Positions 60,087 through 63,000 of a DNA stretch of 64,000 nt are shown here, in pieces. The stretch spans positions 124,001-188,000 of the IMG/VR virus record IMGVR_UViG_3300009508_000011; one strand, written 5' to 3'. The notes under the pieces are model-generated. The model did no database searches. It was not told the DNA's origin and saw only the letters and a program-made list of their open reading frames with translations. How positions within the stretch are numbered: position 1 is the stretch's first letter; each line of letters opens with the position of its first letter. The position numbers and the translations under genes were made by a program.

Positions 60087-63000
60087 ATGTCACAGTTAGA
60101 TGTTTTAATGCGCGACCAGCATTCCCTACTGCGTGTACGCAAGATAATGCAGAAGCAAACAGACGGTGCGTGGAATACCATGTACTCTCTAAGTAACGAT
60201 GCTGAAGTTTCTACTGCATGGGAAACTGGTGTGCAAACCCAGACCCAATGGGATTCTATTTTCACCACTAGTCACAGCACAATCAGTGCGTTTGATACTG
60301 ACGTTGTTACTAGTAAACAAACAGGCACGGCTTGGATTACTGACCGAACTACCGACGCTTCTAGAATAACTGCTGCTTCTACTCAAACAGAGTGGACTAC
60401 CAGTCGTATTACAGAACACGCTACTTCTCAGGATACCCAAACCAACTGGAACATTCAGACGACAACTTCTTTTGTTACTGACCAAACCACACAAACCGAT
60501 TGGACGTCTAATCGTCAAACTGACTATAGCTATTCTAAGTCAACTACGACCAATTGGACTACTGTTGTGGATACAACTTTAACTACCAATAGAAGTACAA
60601 CGACTCAATGGACGACGTCTCACTCGTCAGCTACTATGTGGACTACAAGTCACAGTACTGATTATAATACGTCACATACTACTACTACCTCATGGAATAC
60701 CAGTCAGGCTACCAACAAGTCAACTACGACCCAATGGACTACTGCCCGCGATACAAGTAATAGTACTTCCAAGTCTACCAATACGGTATGGACAACTGGA
60801 CACGCAACGACTAGAACCACTACGGTTAATAAAAATACCGCAGGTACTACGTCACGCAGTACTAGTAGGTCTACCTCGACTGCGTTCAATACGTCAGTAA
60901 CAACTAGTCACAGTACTACAACTCTGTGGGGCACTGCTGTAACAACAACGTTCAGTACTAGTAGGTCCACGAGTACTAGTTATGGAACATCGTATAATAC
61001 AAGTAGAAGTACAGCTACCAGTTTCAATACTTCACACAGTACGACAAAGACCGCATCTAGAAGCACAACAACTTCTTACAATACTACCTGGGGAACTTCT
61101 CACGGTACGTCTAAGTCTACTTCGTATAGTGCAAGTACTAGTTGGACTACTTCGCATGGAACGTCTAGAAATACCTCTTATAGTGCTACTACTACTTGGA
61201 GTACTGCTAAATCAAAGACAACGTCTAGGTCTACGACAAAGTCAAAGACAACGTCTAGGTCTACGACCAAAGCAGCTAGTAGAACCACCACATGGACAAC
61301 TAACTATTGGACATTTTGGGGTGAGGATTGGGATGGTGCTGGTGGTTCAAGTAGACAGACAAGTAGAAGTACTTCTGGTACTACTTCCTGGAATTACTCT
61401 GCAACAACTAGTTTCAGTACTAGTTACGCTGCCAATACGTCGTATACAACCTCGTATTCAGCTAATACTAGTAGGTCTACGACCAAGTCTCGCTCTACTT
61501 CTTTAACAACTAGTTATAGCACTAGTAGGTCTACGACCAAGGCACGTACTACTAGCTACACTACTAGTTACAATACGTCTAAGTCTACGTCTAAATCTAC
61601 TAACACTTCTTGGGGTTACTCTGCCAATACTACGTATGGTACATCCAAGAATACTGTAACTACTTTTGGTACTTCCCACACCACTTCCAAGAGTACAAAT
61701 ACTTCTTGGAATACGTCACGTGGTACTACTAGAAACACGTCTAGAACCACAAGTACTGCGTATGGAACTACGTGGGTAACGTCTAAGAGTACTAACACTA
61801 CTTATAACACGACTTACGCCACAACTAAAGTTACTACGTCTAGTTGGTCAACTGGGTACACTACTAACTATGCCACTAACAAGTCAACTACGACTACGTG
61901 GACTACGACGAAGAGTACCAACGTGGTGACTGGTAAGTCAACAGATACTACATGGACAACATCGTGGGGTACGTCTAAATCCACTACGACTACTTACGCA
62001 ACTGCTAAGGATACTAATTACCAAACATCGTTCGGTACATTAACTAGTTATACGACTTCCAAGTCTACTACTACCTCCTTTACAACAGTTCGTGAGACTA
62101 ACAGAACCACAAGTCAGGCAACTAACACTGCTTGGTCGGTAAGTTCTACCACTAGTGTTGCAATGAGTACCTCGACCACCACGTCTTGGGACACAAGCAA
62201 GTCTACCTCTGAAGCTAGAAGTGGGACAACCACAACTGCATGGACTACATCGTATAGTACTAACGTGCAAACAACTATCATGACTACAACAAACTGGATG
62301 ACTTCATTCCAGCGTCAGACTGATATTGATGCAGGTAAGACAACTACAACAAACTGGGTCACTCAAGTGGCAACAACCACAAGTTGGACTACGTCTTATA
62401 GTACCGGTGTATCAACGGTTAAGTTTACCAATTCAAATTGGACGACTTCGGCCAATACCACTAAAGAGGTTGGTGAACTTACTACGTCGGCAACGACTAC
62501 GTGGACAACCATGCGTAATACCCAAAGTGTGTTCAATACCGCAGGTGATGCTTCTGTGGCTACGGATACTTCTTGGACTACCGCTAAATCTACGTTAACT
62601 GTTTGGTCAACGAATACTTCAGCGACTACTCAAACAACGTGGTCAACTGATGGTACCATGACCACTAGCGTTGAAATAACTTGGAATACTACCGAATCTC
62701 GTAATACAGATTTGGGTGCCGGTACTATGATTAGTACTGACTTCTTAGTTAGCACAAGTCGTTATAGTGACAGACAAACTGATGGCTCGTTCAATACTTC
62801 CGTATCCACTGCAACTGCATGGGCTACTGATACAGTTAAGTCAACGACAACATCGTGGCAAACTACTATATCAACCACCACTACGGTAGCTGGTAATGTA
62901 CAAACTACGACTACGTGGACTACGTCTTACAGCACAACTGCTGATGTTACGTATACTACAAATGCTGACTACACTACCCAGTGGACTACTGCTAGACAGA

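What the first reader, a model, noticed from the sequence alone, without database searches (positions are those of the whole stretch)
60213..62459. A 'protein palindrome': ~370-pair self-complementary beta-hairpin with a base-pair-like residue code
Seen (numbering from TTG 60081, counted by hand): residue i faces residue 838-i with no gap from about T45:T793 to W413:R425. On the alternating face, Thr faces Thr and large residues follow a code. About 50 pairs are aromatic:basic, with either residue on either arm: W413:R425, Y409:R429, R401:W437, R393:F445, K389:Y449, W373:R465, W337:K501, R327:W511, F315:K523, R295:W543, W283:R555, K231:W607, W219:K619, W177:K661, K153:W685, F131:K707, W85:K753, K79:W759, W57:K781 and others. 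Large:small pairs include W405:G433, W123:G715, K397:A441, A369:K469, A399:Y439 and W47:A791. Known: cross-strand cation-pi and Thr-Thr pairs stabilise antiparallel two-stranded sheets. Inference: one continuous twisted beta-ribbon, up to ~120 nm at ~0.33 nm per residue. This is unlike trimeric beta-helix or coiled-coil fibres, and I do not recognise it as a described phage fibre architecture.
Basis: partly seen in the sequence, partly recalled or inferred. Interest (0 to 1): 0.97.

Follow-up and report, generated by a model that had tools for sequence, protein, structure and literature searches.

The report
Giant self-pairing beta-hairpin phage fibre
A jumbo-phage gene encodes a protein whose two halves match each other residue by residue, in reverse order, over 371 positions; it most likely folds into one very long two-stranded ribbon, a fibre design I could not find described, and about twenty other phage proteins share it.

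Summary
In the 1025-aa ORF 60081-63158, residue i matches residue 838-i without a gap from 43:795 to 413:425, which is 371 pairs. All 26 hand-counted pairs are correct.

On one face Thr faces Thr (88 rungs, 7 exceptions). Large residues pair heterotypically: there are 50 aromatic:K/R/H pairs against 13.5±3 in face-preserving shuffles, and 1 like:like pair against 22±3.5. Register 838 scores +206; every other register scores ≤ -3. No parallel (solenoid) period and no DNA palindrome explains this.

The same design, each with its own register, occurs in two jumbo-phage relatives and in 19 gp7-like baseplate proteins, including cultured Stenotrophomonas phage DLP6. Those relatives show compensatory substitutions, matched indels on both arms, hypervariable tips and conserved chain ends.

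The best reading is a single-chain antiparallel β-ribbon fibre module, up to ~120 nm long, anchored at the baseplate.

The 3D structure is not proven. AF2 is low-confidence, although its strands mirror the predicted register exactly. Whether the ribbon stands alone or bundles is open. No family, solved structure or paper was found that describes it.

The parts
60087..63158 (+). Gene for the hairpin protein. The stop is at 63156-63158.
   Evidence: There is no stop for 1025 codons in a ~40% GC genome. Relatives conserve the residue code in this frame.
60075..60080 (+). Shine-Dalgarno-like GGGGAG upstream of ATG 60087
   Evidence: sequence read directly
60081..60206 (+). N-terminal segment (reader residues 1-42) before the ribbon
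   Evidence: no family hit
60207..61319 (+). Arm 1 of the main hairpin (residues 43-413)
61320..61352 (+). Tip loop (residues 414-424, Gly/Asp-rich, centred on G419)
   Evidence: Tips are the most variable part in relatives.
61353..62465 (+). Arm 2 of the main hairpin (residues 425-795), antiparallel partner of arm 1
61095..61205 (+). Tandem 2x54-nt (18-aa) duplication in arm 1 (residues 339-375)
   Evidence: Its partners under register 838 are residues 463-499.
61467..61570 (+). Tandem 2x54-nt (18-aa) duplication in arm 2 (residues 463-497), exactly opposite the arm-1 duplication
62472..62708 (+). Arm 1 of a second, shorter hairpin (residues 798-876)
   Evidence: score 21.0 against parity-preserving shuffles 10.9±1.7, maximum 19.8. 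L001 has a conserved counterpart.
62709..62735 (+). Tip loop of the second hairpin (residues 877-885, contains G-A-G like the first tip)
62736..62972 (+). Arm 2 of the second hairpin (residues 886-964)
62973..63155 (+). C-terminal 61 residues, T/W-rich, role unknown
63167..63186 (.). Terminator-like GC-rich stem-loop just after the stop (matches on both strands)
   Evidence: consensus scan only
59713..60072 (+). Upstream 119-aa ORF with a weak, sub-cutoff match to the Mtd_N fibre N-terminal motif. It is a possible adaptor. It is a separate gene, in another frame, with no slippery site.
56032..57564 (+). Fibre-type protein whose N-terminal ~184 aa is the anchor domain conserved in phiKZ-like tail-fibre proteins. 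The same domain is fused in front of the hairpin in relatives L001 and P0125.
57724..58812 (+). Tail-fibre-like protein (Mtd_N and Phage_fiber_2 repeat) in the same cluster

Best explanation
The gene encodes a virion fibre module made from a single chain.

Proposed structure (inferred). After a short N-terminal segment the chain runs outward for 371 residues, reverses at a small Gly/Asp-rich tip, and runs back in exact antiparallel register. This gives a two-stranded beta-ribbon up to ~120 nm long. A second ribbon of about 77 rungs follows.

The two faces (shown from sequence). One face is a ladder in which Thr:Thr rungs alternate with heterotypic rungs. In those rungs an aromatic residue (W/Y/F) faces K, R or His, or a large residue faces a small one. 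The aromatic residue sits on either arm about equally often (22 against 28). The other face is small and polar (S/T/N/A/G).

Why one register (shown for the scoring, inferred for folding). Like-with-like large pairs and Thr-against-large pairs are avoided, and rung spacing is irregular (blocks of 14 and 18 residues). Only one register is therefore favourable. The sequence works as a barcode that zips the arms in a unique alignment, presumably starting from the tip.

A plug-in excursion. The two ends of the ribbon lie side by side, so the module can be added to different hosts: a gp7-like baseplate wedge protein in T4-like phages, a phiKZ-type fibre-anchor domain in jumbo phages, or, as here, a protein that carries no anchor domain of its own.

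Proposed function (inferred). Both fusion partners are, in the model phages, subunits present as single copies in their local assembly. That would explain a fibre that does not need trimerisation. I propose a thin baseplate-attached filament for reaching and reversibly sticking to the host surface, with the hypervariable tip and the exposed Thr/aromatic/basic face as the contact surface.

Shown: the sequence complementarity, its uniqueness, its conservation and compensation in relatives, and the genomic context. Inferred: the beta-ladder itself, the free-standing monomeric state, the length and the function.
For: 1. A unique ungapped register.

2. Strand-like sequence. Large residues have a period of 2.0, half the residues are beta-formers, and there is no Pro.

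3. Antiparallel pairing beats any parallel offset: 96.3% against at most 72.8%.

4. Independent recurrence, each with its own register.
- L001: 255 pairs, score 163 against 36.
- P0125: 197 pairs, 79 against 17.
- 19 gp7-like proteins with up to about 268 pairs in the best ungapped segment. In DLP6 this gives 36 aromatic:basic pairs against 8±2.4.

5. Covariation. Code-compliant cells are 78.7% against 74.8±0.3% when columns are permuted, maximum 76.0% in 1000. Examples include R:F to F:R and T:T to Y:R.

6. Matched length changes. There are 18-aa duplications at 339-375 and 463-497 and 10-aa indels in both arms of P0006 relative to DLP6.

7. The tip is the most variable region. In the gp7-like proteins the stretch before a globular insert pairs with the conserved C-terminal tail, so the chain returns to the base.

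8. Context. The gene lies in a tail-fibre cluster of a phiKZ-like phage. The relatives are fused to anchor domains. T4 gp7 is a monomer with 6 copies per tail (PMC3004832). phiKZ fibre paralogues occur as single copies in a hetero-hexamer (PMC13250141).

9. AF2 on a relative places its strands mirror-symmetrically, with the best register exactly as predicted (Jaccard 0.90).
Against: - There is no confident 3D model. AF2 gave pLDDT 28 for the window protein and 38.7 for a relative with 18 aligned sequences.
- To my knowledge, a two-stranded ribbon hundreds of residues long with no hydrophobic core has no solved precedent, so its stability as a free monomer is uncertain.
- In the gp7-like relatives the second face is about one third A/V/L/I, which hints at additional packing.
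- The window protein itself carries no recognisable anchor domain.
- One 1.1-kb metagenome fragment (L005) loses complementarity about 21 pairs from the tip. It is probably a chimeric contig, but this is unresolved.
- There is no virion proteomics or imaging for any member.
- Homology between the jumbo-phage and gp7-type modules rests on biased-composition alignments and could reflect convergence.
Confidence: 0.6

Rival explanations
1. Each chain forms the same hairpin, but the functional fibre is a bundle or sheet of several hairpins. One example would be three chains giving a six-stranded rod, like the needle of the T4 gp37 long tail fibre tip, where each chain also reverses at the distal end. 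The small-residue face would be buried between ribbons.
For: Phage fibres are typically trimeric (PMC12143355). The second face consists of small residues (S/T/N/A/G) that could pack tightly, and it is partly hydrophobic in the gp7-like relatives. Weaker secondary registers at ±18 and ±32 could reflect inter-chain contacts or merely the internal periodicity.
Against: The fusion partners are single-copy subunits in the model phages: T4 gp7 is a monomer at 6 per tail, and phiKZ gp133-135 are single copies per fibre base. There are no HxH metal-binding motifs. In the window protein the second face is almost wholly polar. No second register approaches the main one.
Confidence: 0.25
2. The complementarity is between chains. 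Two extended chains would pair antiparallel, as a two-fold symmetric dimer or a domain swap, giving the same i+j=constant signature without a turn.
For: A constant i+j register cannot by itself distinguish intra-chain from symmetric inter-chain pairing (inference).
Against: The centre is Gly/Asp-rich and tolerates 5 to 100 inserted residues in relatives. This fits a tip loop, not the middle of a continuous duplex. An antiparallel dimer would place baseplate-anchor domains at both ends. In the gp7-like proteins the C-terminal tail pairs with the stretch next to the protein's own N-terminal domain.
Confidence: 0.06
3. The T-rich region is a beta-solenoid, a local beta-meander or another repeat fold (like TxT ice-binding helices or triple beta-spirals). 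The antidiagonal match would then be a by-product of internal repeats.
For: Both arms have direct periodicities of 18, 14 and 32 residues. Thr ladders are known from beta-solenoids (own knowledge).
Against: The best direct offset gives only 72.8% T/non-T agreement against 96.3% for the antiparallel register. Off-register antiparallel alignments, which share the same repeats, reach at most 73% and score negatively. Matched indels on opposite arms are not expected for a solenoid. There is no Pro, and the best direct offset is 18 rather than the 15-16 residues of a beta-spiral, apart from a minor Fourier peak at 16.2 residues for the aromatics.
Confidence: 0.04
4. The region is a disordered Ser/Thr-rich linker, or a non-structural low-complexity region, and the pattern is chance or compositional.
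For: Composition is 34% Thr and 17% Ser. AF2 gives no confident structure. HMMER and BLAST treat the region as biased.
Against: Every composition-, face- and pattern-preserving null is exceeded by a wide margin. The feature is conserved with compensation across relatives that share only about 30-60% identity.
Confidence: 0.02

Closest known systems
Needle domain of the T4 long tail fibre tip (gp37 C-terminal region; own knowledge of the published crystal structure)
   Same: It is a phage fibre in which each polypeptide runs to the distal tip and folds back, so the segment's two ends lie at the proximal side. It is all-beta, with strands roughly along the fibre axis.
   Different: The gp37 needle is an interdigitated homotrimer held by His-coordinated iron (HxH motifs) and is tens of residues per pass. 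Here there are no HxH motifs, no sequence similarity, 371 rungs, a Thr:Thr plus aromatic:basic code, and fusion partners that are single-copy subunits.
Tryptophan zippers and designed beta-hairpins with cross-strand aromatic-cation pairs (own knowledge)
   Same: The physical chemistry is the same: cross-strand aromatic:Lys/Arg and Thr:Thr pairs stabilise a two-stranded antiparallel sheet without a hydrophobic core.
   Different: Those peptides have 12-20 residues. This is a natural protein with 371 + 77 rungs and an irregular, register-specifying pattern.
Single-layer beta-sheet rods: Borrelia OspA central sheet and staphylococcal SasG/Aap G5-E repeats (own knowledge)
   Same: They are monomeric, elongated beta-structures exposed to solvent on both faces and used as surface appendages.
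   Different: They are three-stranded and built from many short strands in tandem domains. There is no global chain reversal, no pairing code and no sequence relationship (no Pfam hit).
Antiparallel coiled-coil arms (SMC/Rad50, colicin Ia; own knowledge)
   Same: The topological idea is the same: one chain goes out and back to build a long rod, with both ends at the base and an apex that can carry a functional loop or domain.
   Different: Those arms are alpha-helical with heptad packing. This would be the beta-strand counterpart.
Thr-ladder beta-solenoids (TxT ice-binding proteins) and the triple beta-spiral of adenovirus and reovirus fibres (own knowledge)
   Same: They have alternating Thr on a flat beta face, and they are fibrous beta repeats.
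   Different: They use parallel coil-on-coil stacking or short local hairpins in trimers. Here the parallel periodicity is weak and the antiparallel long-range register dominates.
gp7-like baseplate wedge proteins (PF23786) of T4-like phages, e.g. Stenotrophomonas phage DLP6 AAY80_265
   Same: Nineteen such proteins carry the same kind of ribbon as a C-terminal extension.
   Different: The window protein has no gp7-like domain. 104 other gp7-like proteins retrieved have no ribbon. The DLP6 paper annotates the gene only as gp7.

Membership tests
Self-complementary beta-ribbon module (group defined here: window protein, L001/P0125, 19 gp7-type proteins) | One long ungapped antiparallel register, far better than all others | tested here: met
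   (score +206 against <= -3). Relatives.
Self-complementary beta-ribbon module (group defined here) | One face carries Thr:Thr rungs alternating with heterotypic aromatic:basic or large:small rungs, while the other face is small residues | tested here: met
Self-complementary beta-ribbon module (group defined here) | Evolutionary coupling of the two arms (compensatory substitutions, matched indels) | tested here: met
   (substitutions, gp7-type family). (matched duplications and indels).
Self-complementary beta-ribbon module (group defined here) | The arms are physically adjacent antiparallel beta-strands | tested here: inconclusive
   AF2 gave pLDDT 28 and 38.7.
Homotrimeric tail fibre with chain reversal (T4 gp37 needle type) | HxH metal-binding repeats, and sequence similarity to gp37-type fibres | tested here: not met
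   No HxH. No Pfam, PHROG or PDB hit.
Homotrimeric tail fibre with chain reversal (T4 gp37 needle type) | Homotrimeric assembly | not testable with these tools
   Only monomer prediction was available. The single-copy fusion partners argue against it indirectly.
Beta-solenoid / TxT ice-binding-like beta-helix | Constant direct repeat with like-on-like parallel stacking | tested here: not met
   The best direct offset gives 72.8% agreement against 96.3% antiparallel.
Triple beta-spiral (adenovirus and reovirus fibre shaft) | 15-16-residue repeat with a conserved Pro/Gly turn | tested here: not met
   Zero Pro. The best direct offset is 18 residues, not 15-16, apart from a minor Fourier peak at 16.2 residues for the aromatics.
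Collagen-like or coiled-coil fibre | G-X-Y triplets or heptad hydrophobic repeat | tested here: not met
   No G-X-Y runs. The dominant period is 2.0. 34% Thr.
gp7-like baseplate wedge protein (PF23786) | N-terminal baseplate-wedge domain | tested here: not met
   There is no hit for the window protein. The domain is present only in the gp7-type relatives.
Disordered mucin-like Ser/Thr linker | No positional order beyond composition | tested here: not met
   Composition- and face-preserving shuffles are rejected.
Single-layer beta-sheet rods (OspA, SasG G5-E) | Sequence membership (G5 or OspA domains) | tested here: not met
   No Pfam or NCBIfam hit. Structural likeness could not be tested.

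The most novel reading that the evidence does not exclude
This would be a previously undescribed class of fibrous protein: a free-standing, single-chain, two-stranded beta-ribbon 65-125 nm long. Its unique register would be written in a heterotypic residue-pair code (Thr:Thr, aromatic:basic in either orientation, large:small), playing the role that base-pairing plays in a nucleic-acid hairpin. It would grow by matched duplications on both arms. Phages would use it as a plug-in filament wherever a baseplate or fibre subunit is present in a single copy.
Probability: 0.5. Interest if true: 0.95.

Novelty: new variant of a known kind. Interest (0 to 1): 0.85.

Why it matters
If the ribbon is real, it is by far the longest beta-hairpin known to me, and a new way to build a phage fibre from a single chain rather than a trimer.

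It would be a natural test bed for the stability of two-stranded, coreless beta-sheets. It would also offer a simple, readable pairing code that could be reused to design rigid protein filaments of programmable length.

It also exposes a blind spot. These proteins are Thr/Ser-rich, so BLAST masking and HMMER bias correction hide them, and AlphaFold2 gives no confident model. Similar modules may therefore be widely overlooked in phage genomes.

One member sits in a cultured phage, DLP6, so the idea can be tested directly.

Tried and rejected
- **AF2 on the window protein.** A single-sequence run was uninformative (pLDDT 28).
- **Window-first alignments for AF2.** Alignments A1 and A2, with the window hairpin first and the gp7-type proteins as rows, put the two arms out of register (offsets 18, 4, 22 and 32). 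I did not use them and modelled a gp7-type member instead (A3).
- **Fold searches.** Searches with the low-confidence model found only local likeness to long hairpins of membrane beta-barrels (TM <= 0.1).
- **Searches for closer relatives.** IMG/VR and JGI metagenomes returned only the same phage plus the 1.1-kb fragment L005, whose arm 2 diverges abruptly (probably chimeric). tblastn against GenBank phages found nothing, with low-complexity masking on. The exhaustive HMMER search gave only 6 weak hits.
- **DNA palindrome.** Rejected: there are only three weak inverted repeats, none at the protein register, and reverse-complement codons cannot give T:T or W:K (and the genetic code).
- **Frameshift fusion with the upstream 119-aa ORF.** Rejected: the hairpin frame has a stop at 60051-60053, there is no slippery site, and the gene has its own SD and ATG.
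- **Other T-rich hits.** P0007, P0009 (4608 aa), P0011 and P0126 show no long register.
- **Literature.** Nine full-text searches and five papers gave no description of such a fibre.
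Full report
**What is there.** The finding lies in ORF 60081..63158 on the + strand, 1025 aa counted from the TTG. 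The protein is 34% Thr and 17% Ser. It has 48 Trp, 35 Tyr, 16 Phe, 40 Arg, 34 Lys, no Pro and no Cys. It has no significant Pfam or PHROG match, and only a compositional sub-cutoff NCBIfam hit (19 bits against a cutoff of 650). It has no sequence relative in the PDB.

**Check of the observation.**
- Scanning every i+j register, 838 gives 40 aromatic:K/R pairs and 100 Thr:Thr pairs. The runners-up give 24 and 79, and whole-sequence shuffles never exceed 18.
- With a simple pair score, the best ungapped antidiagonal runs from 43:795 to 413:425, which is 371 pairs with an 11-residue loop. It scores 206 against 62 for the next best.
- Summed over whole arms, 838 scores +205.6 and every other register scores <= -2.9, with a median of -105.

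**The code is cleaner than reported.**
- All aromatic and basic residues sit on the odd-numbered face. The even face is S, T, N, A, G, D and Q.
- On the odd face there are 88 T:T rungs, 92 nonT:nonT rungs and only 7 mixed rungs. Face-preserving shuffles give 93±7 mixed rungs, with a minimum of 65 in 10,000.
- Aromatic:K/R/H pairs number 50, against 13.5±3 in face-preserving shuffles. Even when the Thr pattern is kept fixed the expectation is only 26±3.8, with a maximum of 40.
- Like-with-like large pairs number 1, against 22±3.5.
- All 11 His in the ribbon face Tyr.
- The aromatic residue is on arm 1 in 22 rungs and on arm 2 in 28.

**Alternatives at the sequence level.**
- A parallel, solenoid-type register is much weaker. 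The best direct offset (18 residues) gives 72.8% Thr/non-Thr agreement against 96.3% for register 838. Other antiparallel registers average 50% and reach at most 73%.
- A DNA palindrome is excluded. Only three weak inverted repeats exist, none at the right register, and reverse-complement codons cannot produce T:T or W:K.
- Large residues recur with period 2.0, as expected for strands.

**Related sequences.** Ordinary searches find few relatives because of the biased composition, but those found are informative.
- *Jumbo-phage type.* L001 is a 218-kb metagenome contig that encodes the closest relative. Its arm 1 and arm 2 pair over 255 ungapped positions, with 43 aromatic:basic and 68 T:T pairs and a score of 163 against 36. 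The two arms lie in different reading frames, which switch at the tip.
- P0125 is the syntenic, intact one-ORF orthologue. It has 197 ungapped pairs and scores 79 against 17.
- In both L001 and P0125 the ribbon follows a ~540-aa N-terminal domain homologous to the window's separate gene 56032-57564 (E 3e-14). The first ~184 residues of that gene are the anchor domain shared by the tail-fibre proteins of phiKZ-like phages.
- *gp7 type.* Nineteen proteins of 1244-1416 aa carry a ribbon whose best ungapped segment is 168-268 pairs, each with its own single register. One is the 'baseplate wedge subunit' AAY80_265 of cultured Stenotrophomonas phage DLP6. In DLP6 there are 36 aromatic:basic pairs against 8.0±2.4, and 1 like:like pair against 8.
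- These genes follow gp53, gp5, gp25 and gp6-like genes. The DLP6 paper calls the gene gp7 without comment on its C-terminal half (PMC5349666).
- 104 other gp7-like proteins retrieved have no ribbon.

**Evolutionary coupling of the arms.**
- In an alignment of 18 gp7-type proteins, 78.7% of paired cells obey the code. When residues are permuted within columns the figure is 74.8±0.3%, with a maximum of 76.0% in 1000 permutations (six-sequence version).
- Individual columns show swaps such as R:F to F:R, F:R to R:Y, T:T to Y:R and T:T to K:Y.
- Length changes are matched. The window gene has a 2x18-aa tandem duplication at residues 339-375 and another at 463-497, and the partners of 339-375 are 463-499.
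- P0006 differs from the DLP6 protein by a 10-residue insertion in each arm.
- Arm length varies between proteins (371, 255, 197 and about 168-268 pairs), yet each protein remains ungapped.
- The tip is the most variable part. Between P0012 and P0014, the arms are about 90% identical and the tip 54%. Between P0006 and P0002, the arms are 54-63% identical and the tip 26%. Tip length ranges from 5 to 100 residues.
- In the gp7-type proteins a T-rich stretch (533-573), lying before a ~125-residue globular insert, pairs with the conserved C-terminal tail (1265-1305) in the same code. The chain therefore returns to where it left the body of the protein, and a globular domain can be inserted into an arm.
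- P0125's 90% cluster contains proteins with the same ribbon but different C-terminal modules.

**Extra anatomy in the window protein.** After the main ribbon comes a second hairpin, 798-876 against 886-964, with its loop at residues 877-885. It scores 21.0 against 10.9±1.7 in parity-preserving shuffles, with a maximum of 19.8. L001 has a stronger counterpart of 113 pairs that scores 36.6 against a shuffle maximum of 19.3. A terminator-like stem-loop follows the stop codon.

**Context.** The window is part of a phiKZ-like jumbo phage.
- It encodes split RNA polymerase beta subunits, a tail sheath, a gp181-like giant protein and a baseplate protein 38% identical to that of Vibrio phage pVa-21.
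- The contig is IMG/VR UViG_3300009508_000011, 206 kb.
- The gene closes a + strand run of fibre-type genes: 56032-57564, 57724-58812 and the 119-aa ORF 59713-60072, which has a weak, sub-cutoff match to the Mtd_N fibre N-terminal motif.

**Structure prediction.** AF2 on the window protein alone gave no structure (pLDDT 28). Cross-family alignments could not be kept in register, so I modelled P0006 residues 691-1312 with 17 relatives. Confidence is still low (pLDDT 38.7, pTM 0.29). However, the model consists of long strands whose positions and breaks mirror each other, and the best mirror register is exactly the one derived from the residue code (f+f'=592, Jaccard 0.90). I treat this as weak, independent agreement. 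Foldseek against the PDB and BFVD found no analogue (TM <= 0.1).

**Interpretation.** The simplest explanation for a 371-position, ungapped, antiparallel, heterotypic match is that the two arms are neighbouring antiparallel strands of one chain. That match is unique in register. It is conserved with compensation and matched indels. It has a hypervariable centre and chain ends that meet. The result would be a two-stranded beta-ribbon.
- Established peptide chemistry says that cross-strand aromatic-cation and Thr-Thr pairs stabilise such sheets (own knowledge).
- Avoiding like:like and Thr:large pairs, together with irregular rung spacing, makes all other registers unfavourable. The sequence therefore specifies its own alignment.
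- At 0.33-0.34 nm per residue the main ribbon would be at most ~122-126 nm long and the second ~26 nm.

**Why a single-chain fibre?** Both kinds of fusion partner are single-copy subunits in the model phages. T4 gp7 is a monomer with six copies per tail (PMC3004832). In phiKZ the gp131-like paralogues gp133, gp134 and gp135 each occur once in the hetero-hexameric fibre base (PMC13250141). A chain that pairs with itself can form a filament where no threefold partner exists. This step is inference. A bundle of hairpins (rival 1) is not excluded, particularly for the gp7-type proteins, whose second face is one third aliphatic.

**Function.** The proposed function is a thin baseplate-attached filament for reaching or reversibly binding the host surface, with the variable tip and the Thr/aromatic/basic face as contact surfaces. 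It is inferred from context only.

**Comparison with known systems.** The nearest functional and topological relative is the T4 gp37 needle, where the chain reverses at the distal tip. That needle is a metal-bound trimer with HxH repeats, which are absent here. The pairing chemistry matches tryptophan zippers and designed hairpins, but at about 20 times the length. Single-layer sheet rods (OspA, SasG) and antiparallel coiled-coil arms (SMC/Rad50, colicin Ia) are analogies, not relatives. Solenoid, beta-spiral, collagen, coiled-coil and disordered-linker models each fail a defining test. Nine literature searches and five papers, including a 2025 tail-fibre structure atlas and the 2026 phiKZ atlas, contained no description of such a fibre. 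These searches cover open-access text only.

**Verdict.** The hairpin interpretation is supported by every sequence-level and evolutionary test available, but no confident 3D model supports it yet. I rate the pairing of the two arms at about 0.8-0.85, the complete explanation (free-standing single-chain fibre module) at 0.6, and interest at 0.85. I file it conservatively as a new variant of a known kind, a phage fibre built from a beta-hairpin. If the free-standing ribbon is confirmed it would deserve to be called a new class of fibrous protein.

Noticed in passing
L001:6330-6420 (gene 3873-7169 and frame-2 continuation 6374-8366): In the closest relative the reading frame switches exactly at the hairpin tip. 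Arm 1 is in frame 0 and arm 2 is in frame 2, with no start codon until 7100. The syntenic orthologue P0125 (L006) is one intact ORF. This is an assembly error, a recent frameshift mutation or, less likely, programmed frameshifting.
   Followed up: partly
window 61095-61205 and 61467-61570: Two different 2x54-nt tandem duplications lie exactly opposite each other in the ribbon (residues 339-375 against 463-497). This suggests the ribbon lengthens by matched 18-residue duplications. A 2x30-nt repeat at 61212-61272 faces a diverged 10-aa repeat on arm 2.
   Followed up: yes
window 62472-62972: A second hairpin of about 77 rungs follows the main one, so the protein may be two-pronged. L001 has a 113-rung counterpart.
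   Followed up: yes
L005:1-1101 (Ga0115572_10217291): In this 1.1-kb metagenome contig, arm 1 and the tip are 100% identical to the window. Arm 2 diverges abruptly about 20 residues past the tip and loses complementarity. The downstream part resembles L001 and may form its own 95-pair hairpin. It is probably a chimeric assembly or a recombinant.
   Followed up: partly
P0006 residues ~575-700 (L002:11723-12115); P0010 residues 990-1089: Globular or non-ribbon insertions are tolerated inside the ribbon. All gp7-type members carry a ~125-residue domain with no Pfam match in arm 1. P0010 carries a 100-residue insertion at the tip, which could be a receptor-binding domain.
   Followed up: partly
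P0125, P0127, P0130 (one 90% cluster): These proteins share the same N-terminal anchor and the same 197-rung ribbon but have different C-terminal modules (1222, 1471 and 1102 aa). This suggests module swapping after the ribbon.
   Followed up: no
window 58919-59539 (- strand): A NUDIX-like ORF (weak hit, phrog_8902 and NUDIX) lies on the opposite strand in the middle of the fibre gene run.
   Followed up: no
window 59713-60072 and 57724-58812: The 362-aa protein has the Mtd_N-type fibre N-terminal motif above the Pfam cut-off. The 119-aa protein has only a weak, sub-cutoff match to it. The 119-aa protein is too short to be a fibre and sits directly upstream of the hairpin gene, so it could be the adaptor that attaches the anchor-less hairpin protein.
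   Followed up: partly
window 19883-26293: This 2136-aa protein combines a phiKZ-type giant tail protein (phrog_3201) with a C-terminal metallo-endopeptidase or endolysin-like domain, as expected for a phiKZ gp181-like cell-wall-degrading tail protein.
   Followed up: no
window 1-64000: There are no tRNA genes and no Rfam family at gathering threshold anywhere in the 64-kb window.
   Followed up: yes
P0009 (4608 aa), P0007, P0011: Other Thr-rich proteins were hit weakly by the query, but they lack any long antiparallel register under my scoring. They may use a different architecture, or the hits may be purely compositional.
   Followed up: partly
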